Origin: Macrostomum lignano
Lineage: Eukaryota
Assembly: GCA_002269645.1 (NCBI GenBank)
Contig: NIVC01002144.1
Location: forward strand, 163,022 to 201,206
DNA: 38,185 nucleotides
Reading direction: 5' to 3'
Positions 10,241-36,353 of this stretch are shown in pieces. Below the pieces are notes generated by a model. It was not told where the DNA came from, searched no databases, and saw only the letters and a program-made list of their open reading frames with translations. Positions within the stretch are counted from its first letter, which is position 1. Every line of letters begins with the position of its first letter. A program made the position numbers and the translations under genes.

Positions 10241-13200
10241 ATGGCTCGCTCATCGAGAGTGGACCTGAACTGGGCGTTTTGCTGTCTCTGCAGCTCCTTT
10301 CTGGCTGTGGCCAACTGCCTCTTTCTGGTAAACAATATTTTTGTTGATTGCTGATTTACACGTGTCAACTCCACCACTTAGCAAACCTATCAAGTGGTAT
10401 GCACCAGTAAACAGACAAGATTCCAGCTATAAACTGCATCAATAAACACACAAGATTCCAGCCATAAACTGCATCAATAAAAACGCAAGATTCCAGCTAT
10501 AAACTGCATCAATAAACACACAGGATCCCAGCTATAAACTGCATCAATAAACACACAAGATTCCAGCTACAGTATAAACTGCATCAATAAACACACAGGA
10601 TCCCAGCTATAAACTGCATCAATAAACACACAGGATCCCAGCTATAAACTGCATCAATAAACACACAAGATTCCAGCTACAGTATAAACTGCATCAATAA
10701 ACACACAAGATCCCAGCCATAAACTGCATCAATAAACACACAAGATTCCAGCCATAAACTGCATCAATAAACACACAAGATCCCAGCCATAAACTGCATC
10801 AATAAACACACAAGATCCCAGCTATAAACTGCATCAATAAACACACAAGATCCCAGCCATAAACTGCATCAATAAACACACAAGATCCCAGCTATAAACT
10901 GCATTAATAAACACACAAGATTCCAGCTATAAACTGCATCAATAAACACACAAGATTCCAGCTATAAACTGCCTCAATAAACACACAAGATCCCAGCTAT
11001 AAACTGCATCAATAAAAACACAAGATCCCAGCCATAAACTGCATCAATAAACACACAAGATTCCAGCTATAAACTGCATCAATAAAAACACAAGATCCCA
11101 GCTATAAACTGCGATAATAAACACACAAGATCCCAGCCATACACTGCATCAATAAACACCCAAGATTCCAGCTATAAACTGCCTCAATAAACACACAAGA
11201 TTCCAGCTATAAACTGCATCAATAAACACACAAGATTCCAGCTATAAACTGCATCAATAAAAACACAAGATCCCAGCCATAAACTGCATCAATAAACACA
11301 CAAGATTCCAGCTATAAACTGCATCAATAAAAACACAAGATCCCAGCTATAAACTGCGATAATAAACACACAAGATCCCAGCCATACACTGCATCAATAA
11401 ACACACAAGATCCCAGCCATAAACTGCCTCAATAAACACACAAGATTCCAGCTATAAACTGCATCAATAAACACACAAGATTCCAGCTATAAACTGCATC
11501 AATAAAAACACAAGATCCCAGCTATAAACTGCAATAATAAACACACAAGATCCCAGCCATACATTGCATCAATAAACACACAAGATTCCAGCCATAAACT
11601 GCATCAATAAAAACGCAAGATTCCAGCTATAAACTGCATCAATAAACACACAGGATCCCAGCTATAAACTGCATCAATAAACACACAAGATTCCAGCTAC
11701 AGTATAAACTGCATCAATAAACACACAGGATCCCAGCTATAAACTGCATCAATAAACACACAGGATCCCAGCTATAAACTGCATCAATAAACACACAAGA
11801 TCCCAGCTATAAACTGCATCAATAAACACACAAGATCCCAGCCATAAACTGCATCAATAAACACACAAGATTCCAGCTATAAACTGCATCAATAAACACA
11901 CAAGATCCCAGCCATAAACTGCATCAATAAACACACAAGATTCCAGCTACAGTATAAACTGCATCAATAAACACACAAGATCCCAGCTATAAACTGCATC
12001 AATAAACACACAAGATCCCAGCTATAAACTGCATTAATAAACACACAAGATTCCAGCTATAAACTGCATCAATAAACACACAAGATTCCAGCTATAAACT
12101 GCCTCAATAAACACACAAGATTCCAGCTATAAACTGCATCAATAAAAACACAAGATCCCAGCCATAAACTGCATCAATAAACACACAAGATTCCAGCTAT
12201 AAACTGCATCAATAAAAACACAAGATCCCAGCTATAAACTGCGATAATAAACACACAAGATCCCAGCCATACACTGCATCAATAAACACACAAGATTCCA
12301 GCTATAAACTGCATCAATAAACACACAAGATCCCAGCCATAAACTGCATCAATAAACACACAAGATCCCAGCTATAAGCTGCATCAATAAACACACAAGA
12401 TTCCAGCTATAAACTGCAATAATAAACACACAAGATCCCAGCGATAAACTGCATCAATAAACATATAAACTGCCTTAATAAACAAAGCACAAGGGACCCC
12501 AACCGAAAGCTGCATTCCCCACAAACCGCGCCGCTCCCAGATCTTCGGCACCGCTTGCATCGTGCTGAGTGCGGTCTGGCAGCAGTTGCTGCAATCGTCC
12601 AACAACAATTCGTCATTATCACCATCCGCTGAACGTCGACAGCTTGTTGATTGCCTTCAAGCCGTGGCAACCGCAGCCGGCATCAAGGATGTGTCGCTGG
12701 CAGCTCAGAATGCCCTGAGCTCCATTGGACCAATCGATACCGCTCTGCTGATCCTTGGCGTCAGTTTCACTTTGCTGGCTATCTTGGGCAGCTGCAGTTT
12801 GTGCTGCAGATCGAGAGGCGGCCTGGCTGCTGTAAGGCTGTTTAATTGACTTTTTATTGTGTGCTGATTTCTCTTTAAATATAATTGAGTAGTACCCAGG
12901 GACATATAAATGGTATAGACTCTAATGGTTTCTGAGTACATTGGTTAGAGTTAGAGTACACCTGAGCTATGACTCATATTAGCGTCGATCTATACTTTAC
13001 TGAATGATTAGGCCTGGATTGAAGTCATTGGAAGGAAGACATTCAAGTCCATAATATTTTTACCATTTTTAATCAAATTTAAAAAACAAAACTCACTAAT
13101 TATAATTACAGTAAACAAAAAATATTTTCAAATTCACGACATCTATTTTCAGTACCTGGTCATCCTGTCAATGATATTCTTTGCTCAGCTGCTCATCCTA

Positions 13201-18146: not shown

Positions 18147-21100
18147 CTAATCACCGGCCTTTCGCTTGCGGAAGGTTGACTCTGGACCAAGTCGATTCAG
18201 AGAGTCTTTGACGGCTGTCCACGCAGAAACCGTTTGATCCCTCGGGATATTGAAGGCCTTGTTCAGAATGCCTAGTTTTTTTTAAGAAAGATTTTATAGT
18301 AGCAGCAAATTCACACAAACATTTTCCAACAATGGAATGGCTACAGTGAGCCAGTTTGAATTTTTAGCTTTAAAAGACTATATAGAATGACCTGCATCCA
18401 TCTAATGCCCACAATACTAAGTCAGTTGCCAAAAAACATTCAGTTGCAAAGAAATTGTATCGCTTACTCTTAAGATGGTCTTGCACTTCTCCTGGAGCCT
18501 TTGGCCTTTGTGTCGTGCCTTTGTACTCTCCGAAAACATGCGATTGCACATACTCGACGCCATACCTCGCAGAAGCATATGCCCTGATGAACTTCGACGT
18601 CGTTGTACGAGGCAGATCTGAGAAATTGCAAACTCGCCCATCGTGGCCTTCAAATTCCTACGAAAAAGTACAAAGAAAATTGGTACTCAGGACCGATTGT
18701 TTGGATTATGTCATGATAAATGTCAGTGAAATGTGAAAACGTCAAGCCACATGAAGAAGAGCGAAAAATAAGAAAAACAGTAAAGTAAAATGGCAAAGTA
18801 AAGCATATAATAATTTTATAGTAAATGGTTAGTAAAGAAAGTAAATTAATTTGCACAGAAACTGAGAAACCTACCTCCTTAAGGAAATCAGCTGATACCA
18901 TTTGATGCAAGCTGGATGATGAAGTGCGAATCTTCCTCAGTTTGTGAGCGATGAACCGCTTCAAACTGTCTGAAACATTTGGTGTTTCACATTTGTACTA
19001 TACTGATAGTGATTACATAAGCAGCACGAAATGCAGGATTTGTGAGTAAAAAAGTTGTATTACACTGAGATAATGAGAATAAAGCATAAAAACAAAAGCA
19101 CAAGAAAGAAATAATTAAACCTTACCCATTCCTTCCTGAAATTCAGCCAGTGTGAGAGGCTTGGAATTTGTGGGATCGTTTGCACTTGCTGCCTTTGCTG
19201 ATTCATGAGCCTGAAGAACTTGAGGAAGTAGTTCCGGTGGTAAGGCACGCTGTTCCTCACTTGCAATTAAAGCCAATGATGCCTCAGAATTTTGGTGTCT
19301 GTCTTCAACATGAGTACCAGCTGTCCTTGGCCGCTTGTTTGCTAGACTGCCTTGAGATTGCTTCCTAGCACGAGAATGAGCAGCTGTAGGTGTCGAAACT
19401 GGACTTGGGCTTACAAAAGAAACCTGAGTAGGAGGCGGAGTAGGCTGCCAGGTCTCATCATCATCCGAATCGTCAATATCACCTGCATCTTCATCACTTG
19501 AGTCTTCTTGTTGTCTCATGAAGACTTTCATATGAGACTGGACATGATCAGAGAGCTCGGAGTTCTCCTTGTTTTCAGTTATGAATGCATCAAGCTCCTT
19601 CTCAAGGTAGATCATTTTTGACCATGGTTCAGCTGCAATGAACATGCCATTGAAAATGCCATCCTTGAGAGCAAGTGGGTAGTCCTCACCCTAAAATAAA
19701 AATGTGATTCATTATTAGATTTTGAGCTAATATTAGACCAAATTAATTTTTTAATTAAGAATTATAAACAAACTAAATAGAAAATTCTTTTTAGAATAGT
19801 TAACAAAATAGATATAGCCTATTAGAAAGTTAGACAAACTAAACAAAAGAGTCCTTTAGAAAGATAGACAAGCTAAAGAGAATAAATCCATTGGAAAAAT
19901 AGACAAACTTAACTAAAATAAAACTTTAGATAGCTTAATAGAGTTGGCAAATATAGCCTATTAAAATACTAGGAAAACTAAAAGTATAAGAAATATTAAA
20001 ATAGAAAACTAAAGCACTGGACAATAGTTCAAATAGTAAACTTGCTATTGGATAGAATATAGGGCCTACCTTATCAGCAAATAGACCTTCCTATGAATTG
20101 AACACCTTAGGCTTAGCATAGGAATAAAATAGCTCATAGATAAATAGATATATAAACATACTGAGACCACTATATAAAATGTTATAAAAATCAATGAAGG
20201 CAGTCAAGTTTGAAAATGAATACATTATACAAAATATATATTAAAAAAATAGACAATAAGACATTTAAAAATGGCCAAAATTCTATTGGGTTGTTAGGAA
20301 AGTTCTGTCCGTTTTTTATTTTTCTATGCAGAGGATCATGAAGCTGTGTTGGATCCAATACTTGTGTATGCATATACAGCCAGAGTTGTGGTCATTCTAA
20401 CCAAGTCATTTGCTTTTCAGCGCCCAATTATGGCCAGAAATTTTGAATTAAACAGCATCGCTCTAAGGCAGTGCATGCTATATGATTTTCTAGCAGGTAT
20501 TACAGCAGCCGAATCGACTCGACGCCTGTGCAGTGCATTTGGCCAGGATGCTGTCTCTGACCGCACAGCCCGTCGTTGGTTTGATCGCTTTCGCAGCGGC
20601 GACTACAGCCTTGCTGACGAACCTCGCCCTGGACGCCCATCTGAGATAGACACTGAGCTGCTGCGGACACTTGTGGAGGCCAATCCGCACCAGACTACAC
20701 GAGAGCTGGCAGCCACTCTTGGGTGCTCCCATGTGCAAGTCGCTGAACACCTGGCTGCCATGGGCAAGAAAAGCAAGCTCGGACAGTGGACCCCCCATGA
20801 CCTGACTGACAGGGACCGTCAAAGCCGAGCAGACATTTGCACCTCACTGCTCTCCTACAAGAGAACAACAGACTGGCTGGCCTCAATACTCACTGGCGAT
20901 GAGAAGTGGGTGATGTACGTTAATATACACCGCAAGCGCCAGTGGGTTGATGCCGGCAAACCGCCACAGCCAGAGCCAAAGGCCCCACTGCACCCTAAGA
21001 AGGTGATGCTCTGCTGTTGGTAGGACAGTGAAGGAGTTGTATACTTCGAGCTGCTGCCGCCCAACACCAGCATCACCGCCGAGCTCTACTGTAACCAGCT

Positions 21101-24100
21101 GCAGAATGTGGCCGACTGCCTCCGCACACAGCGTCCAGGGCGTCAGCATGTTCGCTTCCTTCATGACAACGCTCGGCCGCACACCGCCAATTTGACCCGA
21201 CAAAAGCTGCTGGATCTGGGCTGGGAAGTGCTGCCCCACCCACCGTACAGCCCCGATCTGGCCCCTACAGACTACCATCTTTTTCGAGCGCTGCACCATC
21301 ATCTGAAAGAGAAAACGTTTGAAGATGACAAAGGGGTCAAGGACTGCATTACTAACTTTTTTGAATCACAGCCCAAGGATTTCTACAGAGCTGGCATCCA
21401 AAGTCTGCCCTCTCGTTGGCAGAGGGTCATCGATTGCGATGGCAATTATTTTACTGAGTAACACTGCTGCATTCCTATAAAAACTCGCTCCAACATATTT
21501 TAGTCAAAACGGACAGAATTTTCCTAACAGCCCAATATATTCTCTCTATACTTAGAATAGAGAACATATAGAAAAGAAAGGAAAGCTAGCCAAACCAACC
21601 ATAGTTCTTTATGCATGAGTTAGCTAATCATACTCTAACATTGATAGCAACTAAACAGCCTATTTCAAGCACTAAAAAGTAGTCTTTTGCAAATTAAACA
21701 GCCTTGGCCTAGTATTACTAAAACTATAAAAAGATGAAATCTTAGAATAAGCCTAATTCACTAAAAAATACCTAACTAGTTCTATAGTTGGGCATCAGGG
21801 CCTACTCCCTACATGGCCTAAACTAGGCATATGGCTATAGAAGCCCAGCCTACTAGTAAAACAATATAAAAAACTATTTAGCTTCATTTAACTTTAGGCC
21901 CTAATCCATAGTTCGGAAGAGGGCATGTACGCCGGAAATTTCCGGGGTACAGTCAAGAAATTTGGCGTACATGTTGGCGTACAAATAGTAATTTTCTAAG
22001 GCTTTTGGCGTACATGTTTAACCATGATTATTAATTTGGTGTGTAACATGCACCAAAAAACAAAAAATTCGTAACCTAGTGAAATCAATAACAGTTACAA
22101 AGTCGTTCATTATGCATTTACTGTAAAATTTCACGATTGATGCAGAACTGACTTTCGTGTTTTTTGCTTGTGGTGAAGTTGTAATTTTAACAAAAAATGC
22201 ACAAATTTTACTTAAATTTTATAAATAAACTGTGTACATATAAATCTGTCACTTTTTAATAGTTCTTACTAATAAATAAAAAAGTTACTTTCCGTTTTCA
22301 ACATAGACAATTTAAAATTAAATATGTTTTTATCGGGCCGTTTTGGGCGTGAGACATTTGATATTCCAGATAGATACAACCTGGACATTCATTTAGGTTG
22401 TATCGGACTCAAATGCGCGAGTCATCCCAACCTTCGCGGCCCAGCAGTTCCTTGGATGCCCGTCAAAACGGCCACACGCGGAACGGCCACACGACAAAAC
22501 GGCCACACCGTTAAAACGGCCACACGACAAAACGGCCACATAAAACAAAAAGGGTTGCAGATCGATTGCTCATGAGATCCAGCTTATGACATCAAAATGC
22601 AAAAGAAGTAAATGCATTGAGATATTGTGAAATTTATGTAGGCCGAAAAGGATCCGAAAAGGAAGCACCAGAGAAGCGAAGACGAAATTGTTTTTTATGG
22701 AGCGACCAGCAGTTATGCAAATTTTTAAAAGATGCTAAAATAGTTGTGTAAGAAAGCCTCTTCCTCTTCTTCCAGTACTGTTGGAAGCTCCAGCTCAATT
22801 GTTGGTTCGTCAATGCCAACATCCAATTCTGTGCTATGCAACTTAAACAAGCTGTCTACAAGTGTCTCAGAGTCAGCCTCGAGGCCTGAAATGTAGAGAA
22901 TTGGAATGTAGAAAAAAATCTGCTTTATCTCAACTTCACATGCATCGACTTACCTAAACCTTCTGGTAACAACTTCAGGTGCGTCAGATGCTGGTATCCT
23001 TATTCGCAAATGTAAGGCAGGTCGCTCCTCAGCAGCTAAGCTGGGTTCCGCTGCCGCACTGTGCTCAGCAGCTGAGCTGGGTGCTAGCAGGCAATTTGGA
23101 CAAAACCATGGCATCGTCTCATTCTTCATGGCATTGTAGCGAGCTATAGAAACGGCTGCGTCTCCTGCAGTAGCAGCAGATATACAATAATTACCAATTA
23201 CAGTTAATTCAAATAATTACAACTATAACAGCATACTATAAACAGCAACTCACCTTTCAGACACAATGCATGCTGGCGAGGTCTGACTCTAAGTAGACAC
23301 TTTGGACAACTGTCGTCCATTGTTAAAAATGAAAAATGAAAAAATAAAAAATTATTACATCGTGTGGCCGTTTTGTCGTGTGGCCGTTTTGACGGTGTGG
23401 CCGTTTTGTCGTGTGGCCGTTCCGCGTGTGGCGCGTGTTACGCGGAATAGCCACACAACAAAACGGCCACACCGTTAAGCAATGAAGCAGCAATGAACCA
23501 ATGGGATGCAATTGCGGAGTCATAGGGTGCACTCCATGAAGCCTTTCGAGCTGAAAATCCTCGGTGCAAGATTCATGAGCAGCTACAGTACCAAATGTTT
23601 GGAAGTGATTTTGTTTTCGATCTCCTATAAGTAATATATTTACATAGAAGACAAATTTAATAACTGCACTGTAAAACGACAACGTCACAAAGATATATGG
23701 CGTACATCGGCGTACACAAAAAAAATTGGTAGTTTTTTTTCCGGGGTACATACAGAGTGTTCCGAACTATGGGCCCTAATAAATATATTTGTAGGAGTTA
23801 ATAGATATTTGATAGTTAGGCACACAAAACTACATTCATTTTAAGCCATATGCACTCAAGCAATTTATTTATTTTTTCAAATCCTGCAGAATTTTGTATA
23901 CAATATGCAATAGCATTTGTAACAATTACTAGGATTAGGCCTGGGCCTAGTAAGTAAGCAAAAAATTACTTACAAAAATGAATTTCACATCAGGCTCATT
24001 ATGGCTAAGTGCAAGACTGCCACGGGAAAAGTTATGATAAGTTCTTGTCTTTCGAATGAAGAATAGTAGGTACTTCGAATCATAAAATGACGCAGCAGAA

Positions 24101-26135: not shown

Positions 26136-26852
26136 TTGATAATTTTATCTCTGAAATTGCACCCTTTGATTTTATTCCGTAAAATAATAATGAACTTTTA
26201 AGTAAAGTATAAAAAAGCAACTAAATGTAGCTAACATCCTGGATTTATCAGTTTTTATTTTGTGTTTTACGTACTTTTTTACATATAAAAAGTAATCATT
26301 TTATCAGATAAATTCTGCAGTTTTACTTAATTTTGGTTGTGTAAATATAAATTCTTTAAAACCGACAACTTTGGGTCGATTTCAGAACGACGACGACGAT
26401 CTATAATTAGTTAAGCCCACTTGCTTTCTTTCTTTTTCAGCCTTTAGATTTTTGCAGTAGAAAAACCAATGTTTAAAACCGTTTCTATCAACAAGCAAGA
26501 AAATTACGCGTAAAAGGAGAAAGCGTGTAAATTTAAGGGTGATACTTTGCCCTTCTGTAAGTAGTTTTATGCCTGGACATGCACATTTCATTTTTTAAAT
26601 TGGCATCATTCGATTGCCTGTCTGGAGTATAAATTATACATTATCTTTTTTAGCTAGAGAATTCGTCTTATAAATTCATAATTGCCTTTTAATTTTACTC
26701 TTAAGCTGAGGCAGGCTGCTAGTGCTAGGCCTATTACTAATATTAGTAAAGTATTAAAGTTGCCTATTAGTATTATTATTAGACATGAAGGTCTAAGATT
26801 TACTTTATTATGGCATTAGGCTTTAAAGTTTAAATTATGGTATCAAGCCTAA

Positions 26853-27639
26853 GGCTCATTCTATATAAGATGGACATTTTTGGAAAATAGAAAAAAGTCA
26901 ATATTTTTGCTTGCCATTGCCTTATCAGCCAATTTTTTTACCAAATGTTTTTTATGTATAATATCTACAATCTAAGAATAAATGAATGATAAAATGTTAG
27001 ATTAGTATGCTATCAAGTGGCAGAAAGTCATTTTTGTAAAAATTTAGACATTTTTCTAAGCAAAAGACATCATTAAGTTTGTGTACCTTTTAAAAACAAA
27101 TAGAAAGCTTTGGAAGGTTGAAACAAACTATAGATAAAAGTATAGTACTTGCATTATCAGATAAAAGTATTGGTGACCAAATAATCTATTATATTTTTAA
27201 TATATTGGTACCTCAAAGTTACTGAATTGACAGAAAAAAATATGTTACGACCATAATGTTACGACCATAAGGCTGCCTTTTCTTTTGTATCTTTGTTGCC
27301 TTTTTGAGTTTATATATTCTACAAAAAGAGTATGATTACTAAAGATGTTCTTAGTCAACTTTTTAAAAATGTATTGCAAAATATCAAAAATAAAAATGTT
27401 ATAAGACTTTTACCTTTTAGTTTCTATATGTCAAAAATCCTGTTGTTACGACCATAAGTGCCATTCAAGGTTTAATAGCATCTATACTAATGATGATATC
27501 TACATGAAACTCTATAAAAATATTTTTGACAAAATTATCTTTCATTTAAAATATTGGTTTAGTATATTCTATTATTATATTTCATTTTATAAGTAAAAAT
27601 AGCCTGTCATGTTACGACCATGCTTATATGGAATGAGCC
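26853..27639. mobile_element. 787-bp non-autonomous TIR element, 4-bp TSD CTAA
   Basis: GGCTCATTCTATATAAG-ATGG versus reverse complement GGCTCATTCCATATAAGCATGG; CTAA on both flanks; internal TGTTACGACCAT motif four times. Confidence 0.65.
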
Positions 27640-29954
27640 CTAAGTATTTTAGATATATCCATCAAGTGCTTTGTAAAGGCTTTAGTCTTTAGAATTTAGA
27701 AATTTTCTAACAATACAATAGTATACAGCATTCTACTGTATCCCTACATTTAATTATTTTCTTTGAAAATTTTAGTTTCTATTTAGTTTATTGATAAATA
27801 CTATAATGGATTAAATAGAAAGATTTATGAAGTTCAACAGATAAATTGATAATTAGGCCTATCAACTAGTAAAACTAGTGAATGGGAAATCCTAGGCCTA
27901 TAAATAAACAGTTGTACAATAAAACAGCAATAAAAATGGTTGTAGATATAGGTAAATGGCCAGTCATGGTTTTAGGTATATTTATCAATATTGTGTTTGA
28001 GTTATTGAGTCTACTGCATTTGCCCTGCGTTGACTTTATAGTCAGGAAGATAGCCTTTTCATGGAAAATTTGGGAGTAAAAAGAGGTTAAAGGTGCACTG
28101 TGCCAGCATAATATGGTGCAAGAAAAAAATTGGCACTTTTTTGTAAAAGACAAAATCTTATGACCAGACAATATTTTCTCTAATAGAAAATTAGCATATA
28201 ACTAGCAATCTAGTGTAGCCCCCCTTTGGGGTGCCTACTAAGAAAAGAGCAAAAACAGTTCATGGAAAACAATAAAAAGGCACATTTTCTTAAATACCAG
28301 TTCCTTCTTCACTTTTAAAAATCACCTTATTCGTGTAAAATTGTCATAGTCAAAGATGTTTGCAAAGTAAAAGAACCATTTTTTCTTTAAAATTAACAAC
28401 AGACTACAAAATATAGCTTCCCCTAAATAGAAAATATTCCCAAGACAGCAAGCACCCCCTCCAAAAGTAAACAACCCCAGATAGCAAGCATTCTGTAGAT
28501 AGCAAGCATCTCCCAGATAGCAAGCATCTCCCAGATAGCAAGCATTCTGCAGATAGCAAGCATCTCCCAGATAGAAGCATCCACCCAGATAGCAAGCATC
28601 TCCCAGATAGCAAGCATTCTGTGATAGCAAGCATCTCCTAGATAGAAGCATCCACCCAGATAGCAAGCATTCTGTAGATAGCAAGCATTCTGCAGATAGC
28701 AAGCATCTCCCAGATAGAAGCATCCACCCAGATAGCAAGCATCTCCCACATAGCAAGCATTCTGCGATAGCAAGCATCTCCCAGATAGAAGCATCCACCC
28801 AGATAGCAAGCATTTTGTAGATAGCAAGCATTCTGCAGATAGCAAGCATCTCCCAGATATTGTTGAAGCATCCACCCAGATAGCAAGCATCCTGCAGATA
28901 GCAAGCACCTCCCAGATAGTATAGAAGCATCCTGCAAATATAATAAGCACCCCCCCCCCCAGATATTATAGAAGAATCCACCTAGATAGCAAGAATCCCT
29001 AAATAGCAAGCATCCTTAGATAGAAAGAATCCCATACATGTAGCCAATACCCCCTCTCCCAAATAGCAAGTATCCCCCCTCGAGAGCAAGCATCCTCCAG
29101 ATAGCAAGCATCCGCAAGACAGCAAGTAGCTAGTGCAAATGTTACCTCTGCTAATGCAATAATAGCTTTCTTAGGTTGTGCAACAATCCATGTCTTAGCG
29201 AGCGCAATAATCTCTTTTAGATAGCGCAATAATTGGCTTCTCAGCTAGTGCAATAATATTTTACTCATCAAGTCCAAAAATCAATGTCTCAGCTAGTGCA
29301 ATAGCCTTTTCTAATCTAGTGCAATAATCCTTGGCTTATCAAGTGCAATAATCCTTGGTTTATCTAGTGCCATAATCCAGGTCTTTTTAATTAGTCCTTT
29401 AATAAAAGCTTTCAATGAAAAAATTTATGCTACTTTTATTTTTTATTTTACACTACTAAGATTCAAACCTAGGTTGCTGCATTAGCAGTCCAATCTGTTC
29501 ACCTCTATTCTAGCTCTCATTGAAATTATAAAGGAATTTGTAGCACTTATAATTCAACACTCACACCAAGTCAATTGAGTAAAAGTCACACGAAGCAGTT
29601 ATGACATAATCAGTTTCTTAGGCAAGTTAGTACCAGTCTCTATTAAAGTTAGCAATGTGGTTACGCAATATAAATCAAGTATTGTACTATGCTTCCACAC
29701 TGCGTTTTCAATACTGTGATGCAATTCAATTCAGTGTCAAAATTCAGCCAGTATATACAGACAATAAATAAAAAGCCTATTGTGATGCAATCTATTTCAG
29801 AATCAGAATTCAACCAGTCAGTTTTTCCCTAGCATTCCTACAATGCATTTCAAGTTGAAAGAGCTGCTTGACCTTTGCAAAAAAGCTTGTTTTTCGAATA
29901 TTTAATCCCTTTAGCATCGAGCAATTTCTTAGCCACGTTGCATGTACTGTCAAG

Positions 29955-30265
29955 GGAAAATTTCTGATTAAACAGTGCAAGTTTGAACAAAATCGGTTGA
30001 GCCATTTTTGCTAAAATCGATCACATACCAAGATACCTAGATACTTATATTACATGCACAACCTAGGGAATCACTGGGCCATTTCTATTGGCGACACACA
30101 CATGTAAGTTGCTATTGGCTGAGAGCAGTCACGTGACTACTATTCTGTCCAATAGCAACTTACATGTGTGTGTTGCCAATAGAAATGGCCAGGTGAATCC
30201 ATAGGTTGCGCCCAAGCATGCCTAGATACCTAGATACTGACATACCATTTTTAGTATATGGATTT
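29955..30265 (+). mobile_element. Helitron/Helentron-derived (DINE/HINE-like) 3' fragment
   Basis: CAAGTTTGAACAAAATCGGTTGAGCCATTT core, an AGATACCT/ACATAC microsatellite, and a terminal TTTTAGTATATGGATT resemble this family. Assignment is from remembered consensus only. Confidence 0.45.
30056..30211. repeat. 156-bp near-perfect palindrome (MITE-like) centred on GTCACGTGAC
   Basis: Arms GCACAACCTAGGGAATCAC.GGCCATTTCTATTGGC.ACACACACATGTAAGTTGCTATTGG and its reverse complement; centre 30132/30133. Confidence 0.85.
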
Positions 30266-30529
30266 CTTTTTATTAGCAGTTTTTTATTTGCCAATGTATT
30301 GAAAGCTTTTTAATTAATTTATGTAAACAAAGCATTTTCTATGAAAGAGATTCAAATACAAGTTTTACTGGTATTTTTAAAATGGCAGATTATTGATTTT
30401 TGCATTTTTTCAAAAAGTTATAGTACATGTGACACAGGCAAACTTTTTGACATGAATAGTTCTGGCACACAACATAATCAAACTTTTTTGATAGGATTTG
30501 TCCTGGCACAGGCATGCTATGATCTTGAT

Positions 30530-30823
30530 GGGGGGAATCACAAACCCAAAAAATCACAACTCCAAATGTTTTCTATCATAAACCCAAAATATCATAAACC
30601 CAAAATATCATAAACCCAAAATATCACAACCCCAAAATAACATAACTCCAAAATTGCTAGCAGCAAACATTATAAACCCGAAAAATCACAAACCCAAAAT
30701 ATCGTAATTCTGAAAGTTCTAGCAATGTCCAACACTAGTTTGGTTTTTGGAGTTATGATATTTTGGGTTTATGATGGGAAGTGCTTTGAGAGTTGTGATT
30801 TTTCAGGTTTATGATGGCAACCC
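30530..30823. mobile_element. About 294-bp MULE-like MITE with tandem ATCATAAACCCAAA modules in inverted arms
   Basis: Inverted modular arms; flanks ATCTTGAT / ATCTTGAC (8 bp, 1 mismatch). Confidence 0.65.
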
Positions 30824-33048
30824 ATCTTGACTATGACACTAACTGGCCATTGACTAAGTCTACCTATCTAGTAGGCAGTCACAAGCATTTTGTCCATTGC
30901 TTTTTCATTTCTTGATAGAAAAATATTTATAACAAAAGAAATTAAATTTAGTTTCATTCATATACTAAAAATAGTCATTTGGTATCAATTATTGCACTTA
31001 ATAAGACAATGATTATTGCACTAGATAGAAAAAATTTTCCACTGAATCCACAGACTGAATCCACAGACAAAAATTATTCCACAGACTAAAAAAAACTATT
31101 GCATTAGCTAAGACATAGATTATTGAATTACCTGAGAAAGTAATTATTGCATTAGCCAAGGAAATAGTTGCACTAGCTTCTAGCTATCTGGTAGATGCTT
31201 GCTATCTAGTAGATACTTGCTATCTGGTAGATACTTGCTATCTAGAGGATGCTTATTATTTGTGGGTTGCTTGCTATTTTATTTAGGGAGAGGGCGCTTC
31301 TTATTGTATTTAGATGGGAGGATGCTTGCTATCAAGATATGCTTGCTGTCTATGTCTAGGGATACTTGCTGTTTGGGGATGCTTGCTATTTGGGGATGCT
31401 TGATATTGGGGAGACATGAGGCTTGCTCTTGGGGATGGGGGATACTTGCTACCTGGGGGCTGTTTGCTATCTGGGTTAATTTCTATCTGGCGGATGCTTG
31501 CTGTCTTGGGGATGTTTTCTATTTAAGGGAAGGCTTGCTATCTTTGTGAAGAAAGAACTTTAGTTGTTCTTTAAAATGTTCTTTTAAATAAAGGGGGCAC
31601 TAGATTGCTATTAATTCTATAGCTTACTTTTCATAATACAATTTGTGAGTTGTGTAAAAATTTATAGTTATATGTTGTTTAATATGTAGTTTTATTTGTC
31701 ATAATATTTTAGAGAAATGGGATAACCCATTGTATAATATTTAAATATTAGGACAAGCGGGTGTTGCATTTTAGGCTACTGGTTTATTATTGCTATGCTT
31801 AGTGGATTTACTGGGTTGAGTTTGTAGGTCACTGCTACTAGGCTCCTGATATTCTCTAATCCTAGTATGTTAGTGAGTAAAAAACTGTAAGGACACCAAT
31901 ATAGTATTTTTAATTCAACACAAACTTTTAAAAGAAAGAAAAGATTTTTTATTATACAAAAGAGTGGCTTGTTACATTATCTAAGTGCTTGGGCAAGACT
32001 CCCAGTTAGAGGCAAGATTCCTCTTTGTGCATTCTAACTCTATTCCCCTATCCCTTTTACCTTTAACTTCCTTAAATTCTAAGTTGAGCTGCGGAATGCA
32101 GCATGGGTGTTCAGACAGGCTTTCTTTTCCTAGGAGCCCAACTGTTCTATATTAGTAGAGAGCCCAAAAATTCGCGGTTTACCCCCATCATAATTACCTT
32201 CGCTGGCCAAAACTACTGACAGTAGTATAAAAGCATATTTGTCCTGTCTAAATTCTGCCCCTAAACTATGCCCTACTACATATCCAATAGGAAGACAATT
32301 TTAATTTTAACCAATCTTCTAGTCCATAAAACTCAATGTCTTTAATTAGATGATTTATTGATTATAATTTATCTGTTAGGCTTATATTTGATAGATGATT
32401 GACAGATAGCCAGGTTAATAAAAATGTAAACAAAAAATTATGGTAAATATTGTTTTTAGATATGCTTATACTTCTAATAAAATTAGTTGCTTGTTATCAC
32501 TAATATTAAAAAAGAGTTTATCTATTGCTATCTCATTCTAATATCATAATGCTAATGTTGTAATAAATATTTTGTGGCAGACAAAAAGAGTAACAGATGA
32601 ACTGACAGACATCAACCATAAGTCTTATATATACCCCATATTGACTAACCACTGACTAATTCGACCCATCTTCACCCAACTGTCAGACTTGGTGCCATAG
32701 AAATTTTATAGCTTTAAAGCTTTTTTAGGAGGAACTCGAGTCTTCTATTGGGTTATAGACTTAACCAATAGACATGTTTGCTACCATATGTATATTGTGT
32801 AGTTCCATATTGGAATAAGTTTGAAAAATCTATAGACAATCTATAGACATGCAACATAGACCACAAAAATAGCCCAAAAGTGCAACAAATTACATAGAAG
32901 CATTAAAATACACTGCATAAAAGCATAACACAAACACTGAAGATGAAATGAAAAATGTTTCGATGAGGGCCTATGTTATTTTAATTCTTAAATTATTTTA
33001 TAATAACTCATTTGCTGAAAAAGCCATAATGTGGCACAGCCCACACGC

Positions 33049-33183
33049 ATGAATCACTCCCCATCATCTGCCCGCTGCCCGCAGGTGGACGCATCGGCAG
33101 AGCCGCCTGAGTGCCTGCCGGCGCTAGTGCTAGCTGATCACAATCGAGTCCCACCTTGGGACCCTGATCCGTTTGGCACTTGA
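33049..33183 (+). promoter_or_regulatory. Candidate polyamine-responsive upstream ORF (44 codons, ...PECL...VPPWDPDPFGT*) 5' of the ODC-like gene
   Basis: ATG 33049 to TGA 33183; PPW at 33151-33159. GC-rich coding-like island in AT-rich DNA, 190 nt upstream of the ODC-like ATG; resembles the PEGL...EPPWEPS* end of the vertebrate AZIN1 uORF. Not present in the supplied ORF track (too short). Confidence 0.75.
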
Positions 33184-33372
33184 ACTCTGGATTGTTGACT
33201 TTTTTCTGTTTTTTTGAGTGTTTCCTCTTAAATATTTTATCGCCTCCATTGTCTGTTGCAATCAATCAGATTTAATTTTTTATACTTGCGCATCATATAC
33301 ATGTCATACTACTAACAAAGACTTAATTTAGATCAGTAGCAAGTTTAGCGTTGTTTTTGTGTTATTTACCTG

Positions 33373-36353
33373 ATGAGAGAATCGCAACTGGAGCATCAGC
33401 AGCCTCAGCAGCAGCACCTGCTCTCAGCCCCAACACCGGCAGTTTGCCCACCAATTGGATGTGCTCTGGCGCCTCACCTGCCCAATCTTGAGCAATGCGA
33501 TCAGCCGGTTGTGGCCTGCGACTTGGCCAGCGCCCAGCGCTGTCTGGCCGACTGGTGCAGCCGGTTTCCTGGCGTGCACGCGTCAACCAGCGCCCAGACT
33601 CTGGGCAGCTGGCCACTGACCCACGTGTTGGCTCTCAGCGGCCGCGTGTCCTTTCGGGCCTACTCTAAGGTGAGGCTGACGGTTAAAATAACCTGTCTTT
33701 GACCTTATTTGCTATAATAATAATAGTAGTAATTGAAGCAATTCAGAGTTAAGTGTCTTGCTCAGGGGCACACAAATATTATTCCGAGTTGACCTGACGT
33801 GTACTTCGCCCACGTTACTTGACCTTAATTGATCAAATTGACCTTTATTGTCCCAATTGACCATAATTGTCCCAATTGACCTTCAATTGTCCTAATTGAC
33901 CTTCAATTGTCCTAATTGACCTTCAATTGTCCCAATTGACCTTCAATTGTCCCAATTGACCTTCAATTGTCCCAATTGACCTTCAATTGTCCCAATTGAC
34001 CTTCAATTGTCCCAATTGACCTTCAATTGTCCCAATTGACCTTCAATTGTCCCAATTGACCTTCAATTGTCCCAATTGACATTCAATTGTCCCAATTGAC
34101 ATTCAATTGTCCCAATTGACCTTCAATTGCCCCAATTAACCTTCAATTGTCCCAATTGACCTTCAATTGTCCCAATTGACCTTGATTGAGCAGTCCGACC
34201 TAAACGCTGCCGTGTCCGCCGGAGTCCCGGGCCACGCCATCCTGCTGGCCAACCCGTGCAAAACTCGCGGCCTGGCCAGGCACGCTCGTCGCCTTGGCGT
34301 CGGCGTCACCGTATTCGACTCGGAGCCGGAGCTGGCCCGCCTAGCCGCGGCTTGGCCGGACGTCGAGCTGCTGCTTCTGCTGGCCGCATCGCCCCGCTGC
34401 CACCGGCTGGGCGCCCGGCCCGAAGAGGCGCCCCGCCTGCTGGCCGCCGCCAGACGCCACGGACTGCGAGTTGCCGGCGTAGCCGTCTGGTTCGGCGACG
34501 ACAACGAATGCGAGGGCGACGACGGCGGCGAGGTCAACTCCGACGTCGACGCCGAGTGGGCTGCTGCCGCGTCGACCGCCTGCGGTACTCTGGCCTTGGC
34601 CAGGCGTCTCGGCCATGCCAATGCCGATGTTGTCGACCTCGGATGTCTGTCCACCGGCGCCTTGGCCGGGCGGGCCCTGCCGGCCTTTGCGAACGCTGTC
34701 GGTGAGACTTTTTATATTTTCCATTATAGTAAGAGAGTTATTTTTATACGTCAAAATTAGAATTCTTATATTATGCTACTGTAGATTTTTTGTAACTACT
34801 CGTATTTTGCCTAACTTTATTAAAACAAATGTTGTTTTGCGGCATAATTTTTTGAGAGTAAAATGAGTGTGATGCTGAATAATGCGATTTTTATGAAATT
34901 ACCAATTAAAATTAACAGGCTATTAATACAAAAAAAGCTGTAAATACTTCGCTTGCTACAGCGTCACAACAATAATACAGGGTATTTCTTTGCAAACATT
35001 TAAGCCTTTAAAACCATTCTTAGAAACGGAGTAATTTTTATAACGTATTTCGAGCGGTTTCTCTCAAAATGCCTGCCTTAAATAGGTATTGGAAACGGTG
35101 ACTGTCAGCCTCGTCTACTCTGCGACCTGACTCCGGCGTTGCTAGCCGAATCCGTTGTCATGGCAACCAGGGTGTTGGCTAAAGCGGCGGCCGAGCAGCC
35201 AGGCTGTGGCGGCTACAGCTACCGGCTCAGCGGCCCGGGCCTCGGCGGCCAACTTTGCGGCCTCTTCAGCCGTGAGTGCGAGGGCGGCGGCTGCAGCGGC
35301 AGCAGAGACGGCGTGCCAAGCCGACTGGCCGACTGCGGCGGCGACCCGTTGAACCTCGTGCTGCCAGAGCTCAGCGTCGGTGACTGGTTGCTATGGCGCG
35401 GCCTGAGGGCCTGTCCGACCGCTGCCAGGCTGATGCACTGGTGAGCCGTGGCTGTTTTTTTAATTCTAAGAGTGGCTTCGAATTCGGCTTTTCTTCCTGG
35501 AAATTTACATGTGCTGTCTTGAACTTTGCTGGAACATTTTTTACTTGGAACTTTAGAATTTCCCTTCGAACTTTGGGAGTTCATTCTTGGGATTTCCCCT
35601 TGAACTTTACAGTTGGCTATTGGGATTTCCCTTCCAACTTTGAAGTTAATTCTTGGGATTTCCCTTCCAACTTTAAAGTTCATTCTTGGATTTCCCTTCC
35701 AACTTTTAAGTTCATTCTTGGATTTCCCTTCCAACTTTAAAGTTCATTCTTGGGATTTCCCTTCCAACTTTTAAGTTCATTCTTGGGATTTCCCTTCCAA
35801 CTTTAAAGTTCATTCTTGGGATTTCCCTTCCAACTTTAAAGTTCGCTCTTGGGATTTCCCTTCCAACTTGAACGTTCATTATTGGGATTTCCCTTCTAAC
35901 TTTAAAGTTCATTCTTGGGATTTCCCTTCCAACTTTAAAGTTCGCTCTTGGGATTTCCCTTCCAACTTGAACGTTCATTATTGGGATTTCCCTTCTAACT
36001 TTAAAGTTCATTCTTGGGATTTCCCTTGAACTTTAAAGTTCGCTCTTGGGATTTCCCTTCCAACTTGAACGTTCATTCTTGGGATTTCCCTTGAACTTTA
36101 AAGTTCGCTCTTGGGATTTCCCTTCCAACTTGAAAGTTCATTATTGGGATATCCCTTCTAACTTTAAAGTTTATTATTTAAATTTAAAATTTCTATATTG
36201 GATTTTTTGGTATTCCCCTATCGATACTGTTAACCTCGCGATGTTCAAATTCTATTTTCAATTTCCTTAATCGTTTGCAGCCTCTTCACCGGCGAGCTGA
36301 TGGAGACAAAGCCCGCAGCCTGTCTGGAAGAGGAGCCGCTGCCGACCGCTTAA
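33373..36353 (+). CDS. Ornithine decarboxylase paralog, predicted catalytically dead (antizyme-inhibitor-like), 4 exons, about 410 aa
   Basis: Exons 33373-33669, 34194-34701, 35086-35440, 36281-36353; GT-AG, phases 0,1,2, open (1233 nt). ODC landmarks: CDL, F..YSK, GV...ILLANPCK, FDSEPEL, VDLG, LPELSVGDWLLW. The start codon is less certain than the internal exons. Confidence 0.88.
33820..34185. repeat. Minisatellite in ODC-like intron 1, 20-bp unit CAATTGTCCCAATTGACCTT
   Basis: About 16 near-perfect copies ending within about 10 nt of the splice acceptor. Confidence 0.96.
35555..36175. repeat. Minisatellite in ODC-like intron 3, 33-bp unit TTCATTCTTGGGATTTCCCTTCCAACTTTAAAG
   Basis: About 18 tandem copies; source of the spurious MNFKVGREIPR ORFs. 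Confidence 0.96.

What the first reader, a model, noticed from the sequence alone, without database searches (positions are those of the whole stretch)
33373..36353. ODC homolog that has lost essentially all catalytic residues but keeps the antizyme-binding region
By-eye alignment to mammalian ODC: PFYAVKCN becomes ASTSAQTL (PLP Schiff-base Lys69 to Gln); FDCASK becomes FRAYSK (Asp88 to Arg); HVGS becomes WFGD (His197 lost); DIGGGF becomes DLGCLS (phosphate loop lost); AEPGRY becomes CDLTPA; GAYT becomes RACP (Tyr389 lost). The ANPCK...FDSEPEL segment, which overlaps the antizyme-binding element at about ODC 117-140, is the best-conserved part. The frame is intact across four exons, which argues for selection as a pseudoenzyme. 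Inactive ODC paralogs are known to have arisen repeatedly in animals; this one is more eroded than AZIN1, which retains Lys69, and may be an independent origin.
Basis: partly seen in the sequence, partly recalled or inferred. Interest (0 to 1): 0.72.

Follow-up and report, generated by a model that had tools for sequence, protein, structure and literature searches.

The report
Catalytically dead flatworm ODC paralog
This Macrostomum lignano (free-living flatworm) gene encodes an ornithine decarboxylase look-alike that has lost 15 of the 18 residues needed for catalysis. It is still kept by selection and still carries the polyamine-sensing upstream reading frame typical of ODC and antizyme-inhibitor mRNAs. 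It is therefore most likely a regulator rather than an enzyme, and a new example of a known phenomenon.

Summary
Window 33373-36353 (+) is a four-exon, GT-AG gene. It is annotated only as a hypothetical protein of Macrostomum lignano. It encodes a 410-aa protein with the full ODC fold (Pfam E=7e-10; AF2 pLDDT 80; Foldseek ODC E~1e-24).

- **Catalytic loss.** Only 3 of the 18 key ODC residues survive; human AZIN1 keeps 14, including Lys69.
- **Not decaying.** Spliced transcripts of two related species carry the same "dead" motifs. dN/dS is 0.16-0.27, and there are 5-12 indels per pair, all in frame.
- **Antizyme-binding element.** ODC 110-145 is the best-kept segment. It reaches 84% of the identity that active ODCs show to human ODC, against 33-54% elsewhere. 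Four of its five signature residues are kept, plus K to R.
- **New: the gene starts 6.9 kb upstream.** A leader exon (about 26469-26556) and the start of the next exon (33085-33183) together encode a 50-codon, AUU-initiated upstream conserved coding region ending ...DHNRVPPWDPDP. It is homologous to the PPW uCC of ODC/AZIN1 mRNAs and is conserved by synonymous-only changes.
- **A second dead paralog.** Mlig005245 has the same uCC, and the two form one clade.

The most likely role is an independently evolved, polyamine-gated, antizyme-inhibitor-like regulator. Antizyme binding is untested. New member of a known kind.

The parts
26469..26513 (+). AUG-initiated 14-codon upstream ORF (MFKTVSINKQENYA*) in the leader exon. 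Its stop lies 6 nt after the uCC start codon, in another frame.
   Evidence: One search gives the coordinates. A 14-codon AUG uORF ending (E/K)N(Y/S)A* is present at the same place in the leaders of the B paralog in three species. The function was not tested.
26503..26556 (+). First 18 codons of the upstream conserved coding region (uCC): putative AUU start in the context AAA-AUU-ACG, peptide ITRKRRKRVNLRVILCPS. The leader exon ends at 26556, followed by the donor GTAAGT.
   Evidence: The 20-nt motif GAAAATTNCGCGTAAAAAGA occurs once in the window with 1 mismatch; 0.05 matches are expected by chance. It aligns with the 5' ends of the orthologous transcripts L002 and L008 and with the paralog locus L006. 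The same AAA-AUU-(A/C)CG start is seen in the uCCs of two active ODC mRNAs.
26557..33084 (+). 6.5-kb intron inside the 5' leader. It splits the uCC after codon 18.
   Evidence: The donor GTAAGT lies at 26557 and the acceptor CCCGCAG| ends at 33084. The orthologous transcript L002 is contiguous across this junction. The intron holds only tandem arrays and no recognised gene.
33085..33183 (+). Second part of the uCC: VDASAEPPECLPALVLADHNRVPPWDPDPFGT*. The core DHNRVPPWDPDP is at 33136-33171, PPW at 33151-33159, and the stop TGA at 33181-33183.
   Evidence: The core is identical in five leaders from three species and two paralogs, apart from the x codon and one R to S in B_S1. Eight of its 11 fixed codons vary only synonymously across the four leaders compared codon by codon.
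33184..33372 (+). Remaining 189 nt of the 5' leader, between the uCC stop and the main AUG.
   Evidence: It contains one 4-codon AUG uORF at 33301 and is poorly conserved.
33373..33669 (+). Coding exon 1 (aa 1-99). It contains the dead PLP-lysine motif HASTSAQTL (K69Q) and FRAYSK (D88R).
33670..34193 (+). Intron 1, mostly a 20-nt tandem array (33819-34183, 18 copies). It ends in a NAGNAG acceptor (gag|cag|).
34194..34701 (+). Coding exon 2 (aa 100-269). It holds the counterpart of the antizyme-binding element (aa 117-152, nt 34245-34352: LANPCKTRGLARHARRLGVGVTVFDSEPELARLAAA), WFGD (H197W, S200D) and DLGCLS (G236C, G237L).
34702..35085 (+). Intron 2 (29% GC)
35086..35440 (+). Coding exon 3 (aa 270-387, phase 1 to phase 2). 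It holds CDLTPA (E274D, R277P), the degenerate beta-sheet domain, LPELSVGDWLLW and RACP (G387R, Y389C).
35441..36280 (+). Intron 3, mostly a 33-nt tandem array (35558-36175, 19 copies)
36281..36353 (+). Coding exon 4 (C-terminal tail, predicted disordered) and stop codon

Best explanation
The locus encodes a pseudoenzyme, a paralog of ornithine decarboxylase in the flatworm Macrostomum lignano. It keeps the two-domain ODC fold but can no longer bind PLP or decarboxylate ornithine.

I propose that it works as a polyamine-gated regulator of the antizyme circuit, an independently evolved functional analogue of vertebrate antizyme inhibitor.

- **When polyamines are low.** Scanning ribosomes leak past the weak AUU start of the upstream conserved coding region (uCC) and translate the main ORF. 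The protein then uses the retained antizyme-binding surface (counterpart of ODC 110-145) to sequester antizyme. This relieves antizyme's brake on polyamine synthesis and/or uptake.
- **When polyamines are high.** Ribosomes that do translate the uCC stall at its Pro-Pro-Trp motif. Scanning ribosomes queue behind them, more initiate at the AUU, and synthesis of the protein is shut off.

Shown here: ODC homology and fold; loss of 15 of 18 catalytic residues; purifying selection; expression in relatives; selective retention of the 110-145 segment; and a translated-looking, non-AUG, PPW-containing uCC homologous to that of ODC mRNAs.

Inferred: antizyme binding, polyamine responsiveness of the leader, and the direction of the physiological effect.

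My confidence that it is a selected, catalytically dead ODC paralog is about 0.95. That its translation is polyamine-controlled through the uCC, about 0.7. That its job is antizyme sequestration, about 0.45.
For: - **Homology and fold.** Pfam PF02784 E=7e-10. PDB ODCs E~2e-11, or 8.6e-18 with a profile. The AF2 model has pLDDT 80 and pTM 0.80. Foldseek gives its best hits to T. brucei and human ODC (E~1e-24, TM 0.63-0.75) over both domains.
- **Dead site.** 3 of 18 key residues are kept. The same substitutions are present in all three orthologs.
- **Selection.** dN/dS is 0.158, 0.237 and 0.265, with bootstrap 95% CIs inside 0.11-0.35. There are 5-12 internal indels per pair, all in frame.
- **Expression.** The orthologous sequences are intron-less, adapter-bearing RNA-seq contigs that span the spliced leader.
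- **Antizyme-binding element.** The identity ratio to active ODCs is 0.84, against 0.33-0.54 elsewhere. The signature residues K115, A123, E138 and L139 are kept and K141 is R. The AZ1 contacts P113 and D134 are kept, and F170L and Y331F are conservative (residue lists from PMC6313458 and PMC4595762).
- **Antizyme exists in this species.** An M. lignano antizyme with a UUU-UGA frameshift site is reported in PMC1874602.
- **uCC.**. It runs 48-55 codons from a conserved AAA-AUU-(A/C)CG. The transcripts have no in-frame AUG. The core HN(R/S)xPPWDPDP is conserved, and across four leaders compared codon by codon its changes are synonymous only.
- **uCC homology.** Two active ODC mRNAs, each 63% identical to scallop ODC, have the same start context, 47-49 codons, and end ...NAEPPW(E/D)PS*.
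- **uCC mechanism, from the literature.** PPW stalling, ribosome queuing, and repression of AZIN1 by polyamines (PMC2811004, PMC10855120, PMC11550727).
- **Direction of control.** Retaining a leader that switches the protein off when polyamines are high fits a factor that raises polyamines.
Against: - No binding, activity or polyamine-response experiment exists for this protein.
- Several human ODC-AZ1 contact residues are changed (Q116T, Q119L, V137P, R144A). The C-domain interface II is largely eroded.
- The retained 110-145 surface is also the one that packs against the partner subunit in ODC dimers (PMC4595762). Its conservation therefore does not single out antizyme.
- In planarians, the closest studied flatworms, RNAi of dead ODC-like paralogs gave a phenotype that putrescine, DFMO or antizyme co-silencing did not modify. 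The authors excluded an AZIN role there (PMC5574924).
- I could not establish that M. lignano has an active ODC for antizyme to act on.
- The uCC ending differs from the canonical PS*: it is DP followed by 0-7 extra codons. Its stalling behaviour could differ.
- The uCC is inherited from ordinary ODC genes, so on its own it does not distinguish an AZIN-like role from other roles.
Confidence: 0.5

Rival explanations
1. The protein has left polyamine metabolism. It is a selected pseudoenzyme with a new, antizyme-independent role, as proposed for planarian ODC5/ODC6 in the wound and epidermal response. The uCC is either an inherited leftover or now couples that new role to polyamine status.
For: In planarians, RNAi of ODC-like paralogs gives a lethal wound-response phenotype. 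It is not rescued by putrescine, not mimicked by DFMO, and not changed by antizyme co-silencing (PMC5574924). Erosion here is extreme: 3 of 18 residues remain, interface II contacts are lost, and Pfam no longer detects the C-terminal domain. Two dead paralogs are kept in each of three species, which suggests more than a simple decoy.
Against: The uCC is not a passive leftover. Its core peptide is held by synonymous-only change in both paralogs over dS of about 1 or more. The antizyme-binding element is retained selectively. No shared derived substitutions link these proteins to planarian ODC6: the states are K69S/D88S/R154A/H197F against K69Q/D88R/R154L/H197W.
Confidence: 0.25
2. It is a dead subunit that heterodimerises, either with an active ODC (as activator or inhibitor, in the manner of trypanosomatid prozymes) or with the second dead paralog (an A-B heterodimer). 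The retained 110-145 surface would then serve as a dimer interface.
For: In ODC the antizyme-binding surface is the one covered by the partner's C-terminal domain (PMC4595762). The A and B paralogs co-occur in all three species and come from the same RNA-seq runs. Dead-paralog activators are known in polyamine pathways (PMC3663545, listed). The planarian authors raised ODC5/6 heterodimers.
Against: Both paralogs have lost the N-domain residues (K69, D88, H197, Gly loop) and the C-domain residues (C360/D361). An A-B dimer therefore cannot rebuild even one active site. Several ODC dimer-interface residues are changed (R277P, Y389C, and F397 falls at an alignment gap). An inhibitory partner of ODC would be expected to be induced by polyamines, not repressed, yet the uCC predicts repression.
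Confidence: 0.17
3. It is a decaying, transcribed pseudogene whose open frame is a coincidence, or a gene-prediction artefact in GC-rich DNA.
For: The sequence is GC-rich (68% GC, GC3 76%). In such DNA long open frames arise easily, and overlapping ORFs are seen on both strands. The two M. lignano copies are too similar to show constraint: 6 substitutions, none in exons.
Against: dN/dS is 0.16-0.27 with no bootstrap replicate above 0.40. All 5-12 indels per pair are in frame. Conserved blocks alternate with variable loops. The splice junctions are confirmed by orthologous mRNAs. The fold is confidently predicted.
Confidence: 0.02
4. It is still an enzyme, using the ODC scaffold for a different, PLP-independent reaction or for small-molecule (polyamine) binding.
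For: The barrel and the pocket-lining segments are among the most conserved and most confidently modelled parts (pLDDT above 90 for aa 50-200). The replaced positions are themselves invariant among orthologs (Q, R, W, D, C, L).
Against: No known activity of this fold lacks the Schiff-base lysine. Nothing in the sequence suggests a new catalytic constellation. Invariance of the replaced positions over this short evolutionary span is also expected from general constraint.
Confidence: 0.05

Closest known systems
Vertebrate antizyme inhibitor 1 (AZIN1)
   Same: It is an ODC paralog without decarboxylase activity. It keeps the ODC fold and the antizyme-binding element. Its mRNA carries a non-AUG (AUU) upstream conserved coding region with a PPW motif that represses translation when polyamines are high (PMC2811004, PMC10855120, PMC6313458).
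   Different: The two are not orthologous. AZIN1 arose in early vertebrates (PMC2811004), whereas this protein sits in a Macrostomum-restricted clade and scores better against ODC than against AZIN1. AZIN1 keeps 14 of 18 key residues, including Lys69, and is 57% identical to ODC. This protein keeps 3 of 18 and is 22% identical. The uCC ends PPWDPDP plus 0-7 codons instead of PPWxxPS*. Antizyme binding is not shown here.
Planarian ODC-like paralogs (Dugesia/Schmidtea ODC2-6, especially ODC6)
   Same: These are flatworm ODC homologs with substitutions at key residues, including Lys69, Asp88 and His197 in ODC6. They are expressed and functionally required (PMC5574924).
   Different: The substituted states differ: ODC6 has K69S, D88S, R154A and H197F/Y, against Q, R, L and W here. 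ODC6 keeps the whole C-domain set (C360 to F397) and still matches human ODC at E~1e-39, against about 1e-11 here. No evidence of orthology was found.
Second Macrostomum dead-ODC paralog (Mlig005245; UniRef A0A1I8GZH3 and relatives P0004, P0007)
   Same: It is sister to this gene (A+B clade in 200 of 200 bootstraps). It keeps 4 of 18 key residues and shares the derived states D88R, R154L and E274D. It has the same leader layout: a 14-codon AUG uORF, then an AUU uCC split by an intron after codon 18, with the core DHN(R/S)xPPWDPDP.
   Different: It is only 31-40% identical and 60-100 aa longer. L139 of the antizyme-binding element is Ala. Its constraint is looser (dN/dS 0.33).
Recurrently emerging inactive ODC homologs of invertebrates (mosquitoes, Ciona, amphioxus, Hydra; Ivanov, Firth and Atkins 2010, as summarised in PMC5574924 and PMC6313458)
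   Same: The phenomenon is the same: lineage-specific ODC duplicates that lose key residues and are presumed to be regulatory.
   Different: Those cases were defined by a few substitutions among the 18 residues. Here nearly the whole set is gone, and the duplicate pair is shown to be under purifying selection with a conserved uCC. I could not read the 2010 paper, so I cannot say whether Macrostomum was included.
uCC-bearing active ODC mRNAs of invertebrates
   Same: They share the AAA-AUU-(A/C)CG start, the lack of an in-frame AUG, a length of about 50 codons, and N-x-E-P-P-W-(D/E)-P near the end.
   Different: In those mRNAs the uCC precedes an active enzyme and ends ...PPW(E/D)PS*. Here it precedes a dead paralog and ends ...PPWDPDP with a variable tail. 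It is also overlapped at its start by a conserved 14-codon AUG uORF.

Membership tests
Eukaryotic ODC family (group IV PLP decarboxylases; Pfam PF02784 + PF00278) | N-terminal alpha/beta-barrel domain recognisable by sequence | tested here: met
   PF02784 scores E=7e-10 and 39.1 bits (cut-off 23.4) over aa 79-199. PDB ODCs score E~2e-11.
Eukaryotic ODC family (group IV PLP decarboxylases; Pfam PF02784 + PF00278) | C-terminal beta-sheet domain (PF00278) | tested here: inconclusive
   PF00278 was not reported by Pfam. However, the profile aligns through position 365 to PBCV arginine decarboxylase and to lysine/ornithine decarboxylases. The AF2 model superposes on ODC over both domains (TM 0.63-0.75 over 355-390 columns).
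Eukaryotic ODC family (group IV PLP decarboxylases; Pfam PF02784 + PF00278) | Schiff-base lysine (K69) and the PLP- and substrate-binding residues (the 18-residue set) | tested here: not met
   3 of 18 are kept. The changes include K69Q, D88R, R154L, H197W, S200D, G236C, G237L, E274D, R277P, G387R and Y389C, and they are identical in three orthologs. It is a homolog, not a functional member.
Antizyme inhibitors (functional class) | ODC homolog devoid of decarboxylase activity | tested here: met
   Met by sequence only. No enzyme assay was done.
Antizyme inhibitors (functional class) | Conserved antizyme-binding element (ODC 110-145; signature residues K115, A123, E138, L139, K141) | tested here: met
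   The residues are K, A, E, L and R. The segment is 44% identical to human ODC, against a 53% median for active ODCs, and is the best-kept part of the protein. Other contact residues are changed (Q116T, Q119L, V137P, R144A).
Antizyme inhibitors (functional class) | Binds antizyme more tightly than ODC and releases ODC | not testable with these tools
   This needs a pull-down or ITC, or a multimer prediction with the M. lignano antizyme. That antizyme is reported to exist in PMC1874602.
Antizyme inhibitors (functional class) | An active ODC and an antizyme present in the same organism | tested here: inconclusive
   Antizyme: yes, from the literature. Active ODC: not found. The only feasible search listed just the best 120 hits, and the named ones were almost all molluscs. 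The window holds no other ODC piece.
Vertebrate AZIN1/AZIN2 orthology group | Descent from the vertebrate AZIN duplications | tested here: not met
   It forms a clade with the Macrostomum B paralog in 200 of 200 bootstraps. The profile scores human ODC at 8.6e-18 against AZIN1 at 1.4e-11. Identity is 18% to AZIN1 and 22% to ODC.
uCC-regulated ODC-homolog mRNAs (Ivanov, Loughran and Atkins 2008) | Conserved upstream coding region lacking an AUG, with a near-cognate (usually AUU) start in a good context | tested here: met
   AAA-AUU-(A/C)CG is conserved in five leaders and in two active ODC mRNAs. The transcripts have no in-frame AUG. Position -3 is A.
uCC-regulated ODC-homolog mRNAs (Ivanov, Loughran and Atkins 2008) | Conserved C-terminal peptide with adjacent prolines (PPW), selected at the amino-acid level | tested here: met
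   In the core DHNRxPPWDPDP, 8 of the 11 fixed codons differ only synonymously among the four leaders compared codon by codon.
uCC-regulated ODC-homolog mRNAs (Ivanov, Loughran and Atkins 2008) | Animal-type ending ...Pro-Ser-stop | tested here: not met
   It ends PPWDPDP, followed by the stop (species S2) or by 3-7 more codons. The reference mollusc-like uCCs end PPW(E/D)PS*.
uCC-regulated ODC-homolog mRNAs (Ivanov, Loughran and Atkins 2008) | Polyamine-dependent repression of the main ORF | not testable with these tools
   This needs reporter assays with and without spermidine or DFMO.

The most novel reading that the evidence does not exclude
The two dead paralogs (this gene and Mlig005245) no longer act on antizyme at all. 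They are a co-retained pseudoenzyme pair, possibly a heterodimer, with a new cellular role, as hinted for planarian ODC5/6. Their ancestral polyamine-sensing uCC has been kept in order to gate that new role by cellular polyamine status. A translational polyamine sensor would thus have been co-opted to control a pathway outside polyamine metabolism.
Probability: 0.2. Interest if true: 0.7.

Novelty: new member of a known kind. Interest (0 to 1): 0.5.

Why it matters
Catalytically dead ODC paralogs that regulate polyamine homeostasis are well studied only in vertebrates (AZIN1 and AZIN2). Their recurrent emergence elsewhere has rested mostly on a few substitutions.

This locus gives a clean invertebrate case with several lines of evidence at once:
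- near-total loss of the active site;
- measurable purifying selection;
- a retained antizyme-binding segment;
- a retained, peptide-level-conserved PPW uCC;
- a sister paralog with the same layout.

If antizyme binding is confirmed, it shows convergent evolution of the whole AZIN module, protein decoy plus polyamine-sensing leader, in a genetically tractable regenerating flatworm. If it is not confirmed, it shows a polyamine sensor driving something new.

The result also corrects the gene model. A leader exon lies 6.9 kb upstream, and the uCC is split by an intron.

Tried and rejected
1. **Search for an active ODC in M. lignano.** The A-type query found only its own three orthologs. The names of 30 representatives from the HMM search were protists, environmental sequences, molluscs, insects or mites. 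A scallop-ODC query returned 7865 hits, of which only the best 120 were listed, and the named ones were almost all molluscs. The question stays open.
2. **Primary uCC papers.** PMC2481320 and PMC5916843 are not held. I relied on reviews, and on two reference uCCs that I extracted myself.
3. **Planarian ODC-like sequences.** The supplement of PMC5574924 gives identifiers and primers only, so orthology to ODC6 could be judged only from the published substitution table.
4. **Deep placement of the A+B clade.** The nearest neighbours by distance are GC-rich protist and environmental ODCs. I take this to be compositional or long-branch noise, not a signal of origin.
5. **Intron positions as evidence for a shared origin of A and B.** Two introns lie within 2-4 codons of each other in the same phase, but not at identical positions. 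This is inconclusive and was not used.
6. **Comparison of the two M. lignano genomic copies.** There are 6 substitutions in 4.6 kb and none in exons. They are too similar to say anything about constraint.
7. **Alternative exon supplying Lys69.** Rejected. The K69 region lies inside exon 1 with homologous flanks, the orthologous mRNAs agree, and tblastn finds no other ODC-like piece in the window.
8. **Literature on the locus tags.** No paper mentions Mlig015075 or Mlig005245.


Full report
**What is there**

The region 33373-36353 on the + strand contains four GC-rich blocks (68% GC, GC3 76%). They are separated by AT-rich introns (29-38% GC) with GT-AG borders. Joined together they give one open frame.

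A database search shows that the product is identical to a deposited 410-aa "hypothetical protein BOX15_Mlig015075g3" of the free-living flatworm Macrostomum lignano. The window is the last 38 kb of contig NIVC01002144.1. The deposited model and both orthologs use the second AG of a NAGNAG acceptor, so exon 2 starts at 34194, not 34191. A nearly identical second genomic copy exists (L004). It differs by 6 substitutions in 4.6 kb, none in exons.

**Homology and loss of the active site**

- Pfam reports Orn_Arg_deC_N at E=7e-10.
- phmmer against PDB gives T. brucei and human ODC at about 2e-11.
- A three-sequence profile gives human ODC at 8.6e-18 and AZIN1 at 1.4e-11.

ODC matched 2on3_A at 461 of 461 positions. 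AZIN1 matched 4zgz_A at 435 of 436.

On a MAFFT alignment of 81 sequences I scored the 18 residues used in the literature as the ODC catalytic set (PMC5574924, Table 2). The window protein keeps three: G171, G235 and D364. The changes include K69Q, D88R, R154L, K169R, H197W, S200D, G236C, G237L, E274D, R277P, G387R and Y389C. Human AZIN1 keeps 14, including Lys69. tblastn with human and scallop ODC finds no other ODC-like fragment in the window, so no alternative exon can supply the lysine.

**The fold is retained**

An AlphaFold2 model built on a 68-sequence alignment has mean pLDDT 80 and pTM 0.80. Only the first 26 and last 31 residues are disordered. Foldseek against PDB returns ODCs and the chlorella-virus arginine decarboxylase. 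E is about 1e-24 and TM is 0.63-0.75 over 355-390 columns, which covers both domains.

**It is not decaying**

Two other species carry orthologs, P0002 at 83% identity and P0003 at 66%. They come from SRA runs SRR28338166 and SRR30276804/812.

Both sequences are contiguous contigs without the three introns. One also lacks the 6.5-kb leader intron, and Illumina adapter remnants are visible. They are therefore spliced mRNAs.

All the "dead" motifs are identical in the three orthologs, while the loops between conserved blocks vary by in-frame indels, 5-12 events per pair. Nei-Gojobori dN/dS is 0.158, 0.237 and 0.265 at dS 0.77-1.16. Bootstrap 95% intervals lie within 0.11-0.35, and no replicate exceeds 0.40. 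Constraint is strongest in aa 48-203 and 278-330.

**The antizyme-binding element**

Using the published definitions (AZBE = residues 110-145, with five signature residues, PMC6313458; ODC-AZ1 contacts, PMC4595762), I find:

- The signature residues K115, A123, E138 and L139 are kept, and K141 is Arg.
- P113 and D134, the salt bridge to antizyme, are kept.
- F170L and Y331F are conservative changes.
- Q116T, Q119L, V137P and R144A are changed.

Identity to human ODC over 110-145 is 44%, against a 53% median for 50 active ODCs (ratio 0.84). For the other segments the ratio is 0.33-0.54.

One caveat applies. In ODC dimers this surface is covered by the partner's C-terminal domain, and antizyme occupies that same place (PMC4595762). 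Retention of the segment is thus compatible with any partner that binds there.

**A second dead paralog**

An HMM search of 1.84 billion representatives gave 1200 ODC-family hits. The hits related to this gene beyond the generic ODC background are P0004, P0007 and P0010. P0010 and its cluster are M. lignano proteins (Mlig005245, three genomic copies). P0004 and P0007 come from the same RNA-seq runs as the two orthologs above. Each of the three species therefore has an A type (this gene) and a B type.

B keeps 4 of 18 key residues and shares the derived states D88R, R154L and E274D with A. In a neighbour-joining tree (377 columns), A, B and A+B are each monophyletic in 200 of 200 bootstraps. 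B is also constrained, with dN/dS 0.33 and CI 0.24-0.43. The simplest reading is one loss of activity before an A/B duplication within this lineage, independent of vertebrate AZIN1 and AZIN2. The sister group of the clade is unresolved.

**The leader: the main new finding**

The 5' part of the orthologous transcript L002 aligns with window 33085-33175. In one frame both read ...DHNR(V/I)PPWDPDP. The same core lies upstream of the B paralog in M. lignano genomic DNA and in the B transcripts of both other species.

Among the four leaders compared codon by codon, 8 of the 11 fixed codons of the core differ, always synonymously. That is the signature of a translated, peptide-level-selected element.

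The transcripts have no in-frame AUG. The frame opens at a conserved AAA-AUU-(A/C)CG-CGU-AAA-AAG. In the window this motif lies at 26499-26518, which is 6.6 kb upstream of 33085. It is followed 38 nt later by a GTAAGT donor (GT at 26557), and CCCGCAG| ends at 33084. The paralog locus has the same split after codon 18.

Spliced, the window's uCC is 50 codons: ITRKRRKRVNLRVILCPSVDASAEPPECLPALVLADHNRVPPWDPDPFGT*.

A 14-codon AUG uORF (26469-26513) overlaps the AUU in another frame. It is conserved in length and ending in the four leaders that reach that far.

For a tool-based yardstick I pulled two transcripts of active ODCs, each 63% identical to scallop ODC. Their leaders carry an AUG-less frame of 47-49 codons that starts AAA-AUU-(A/C)CG and ends ...KLNFNAEPPW(E/D)PS*. 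The Macrostomum element is therefore homologous to the animal ODC uCC and has a variant ending.

According to the literature, this element was described in ODC homologs of animals and fungi and in AZIN1. It initiates at AUU. When polyamines are high it stalls ribosomes at PPW, scanning ribosomes queue behind them, and the main ORF is repressed (PMC2811004, PMC10855120, PMC11550727).

**Context for the proposed mechanism**

M. lignano has an antizyme gene with a UUU-UGA frameshift site (PMC1874602). I could not determine whether it has an active ODC.

Planarians have six ODC homologs, five of them substituted. RNAi of ODC5 and ODC6 gives a phenotype independent of putrescine, DFMO and antizyme, and the authors argue against an AZIN role there (PMC5574924). 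This is the strongest argument against simply carrying the AZIN model over to flatworms.

The substitution states of planarian ODC6 differ from those here, and ODC6 is much less diverged from ODC. I see no evidence that the two are orthologous, but I could not test this with sequences.

**Verdict**

The locus is a selected, expressed, catalytically dead ODC paralog. It retains the antizyme-binding segment and an ancestral polyamine-sensing uCC. It most likely acts as a polyamine-gated regulator of the antizyme circuit, evolved independently of vertebrate AZINs.

Confidence in the pseudoenzyme status is high. Confidence in uCC-mediated control is good. Confidence in antizyme sequestration is moderate.

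It is a new member of a known kind. The known kind is the recurrent emergence of inactive ODC homologs, with uCC control of ODC homologs. Three things stand out: the degree of erosion, the paralog pair, and the split, uORF-overlapped uCC. No paper in the searchable library mentions either locus tag.

Noticed in passing
L008 1-300 and L009 (B-paralog transcripts of species S2); P0010 (UniRef model of the M. lignano B paralog): In species S2 the main ORF of the B paralog has no AUG near its start. The gene caller used a GTG that overlaps the uCC stop (GGGTGA), and the ORF is open in the -1 frame across the end of the uCC. In a UniRef model of the M. lignano B paralog, the uCC is fused in frame to the main ORF (...PPWDPDPTTDQPMPRVF) through a leader intron. 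Both hint that part of the B protein may be made by continuing from the uCC, or by non-AUG initiation.
   Followed up: partly
window 26469-26513: A 14-codon AUG uORF overlaps the AUU start of the uCC. It has the same length and the same ...(E/K)N(Y/S)A* ending in the A and B leaders of several species. The 20-nt motif GAAAATTNCGCGTAAAAAGA is more conserved at the nucleotide level than either peptide requires. Its role is unknown; it might affect start-site choice or reinitiation.
   Followed up: partly
window 33819-34183 and 35558-36175: Introns 1 and 3 of the gene consist largely of tandem arrays: a 20-nt unit in 18 copies at 95% match, and a 33-nt unit in 19 copies. The two M. lignano genomic copies differ mainly by indels in intron and downstream sequence.
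   Followed up: partly
window 1800-12500: The first third of the window is a mosaic of long tandem arrays with unrelated units. Examples are a 14-nt unit in 63 copies at 6236-7110, a 14-nt unit in 87 copies at 8662-9877, and a 35-nt unit in 58 copies at 10400-12463. Units of 18, 24 and 33 nt occur elsewhere. Most of the long 'ORFs' listed there are artefacts of these repeats.
   Followed up: no
window 15290-17686 (-): An intron-less 798-aa ORF with an ATG start matches Pfam DUF1258 (E=8e-14). It contains a short 24-nt tandem repeat near its 5' end. It may be a repeat- or transposon-associated gene and was not examined further.
   Followed up: no
window 20346-21461 (+): A fragmented mariner/Mos1-type transposase: HTH_48 at E=4e-20 and the start of the DDE domain at E=9e-11, broken across ORFs.
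   Followed up: no
window 506-1474 (-): An ORF with a weak retroviral-type aspartyl protease match (gag-asp_proteas, E=8e-6, just below the Pfam cut-off). It is probably an LTR-retroelement remnant.
   Followed up: no
window 22464-22540 and 23360-23432: Two short 16-nt tandem arrays are reverse complements of each other (CAAAACGGCCACACGA and TCGTGTGGCCGTTTTG), about 820 nt apart. They look like the inverted ends of a small mobile element.
   Followed up: no
window 33373-36353 versus its introns: There is a sharp compositional contrast: the coding sequence is 68% GC (GC3 76%), while the introns are 29-38% GC. The orthologs and the B paralog are similarly GC-rich (GC3 64-80%). The proteins are consequently rich in Ala, Gly, Arg and Leu, and this probably explains why the nearest non-flatworm neighbours by distance are GC-rich protist ODCs.
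   Followed up: partly
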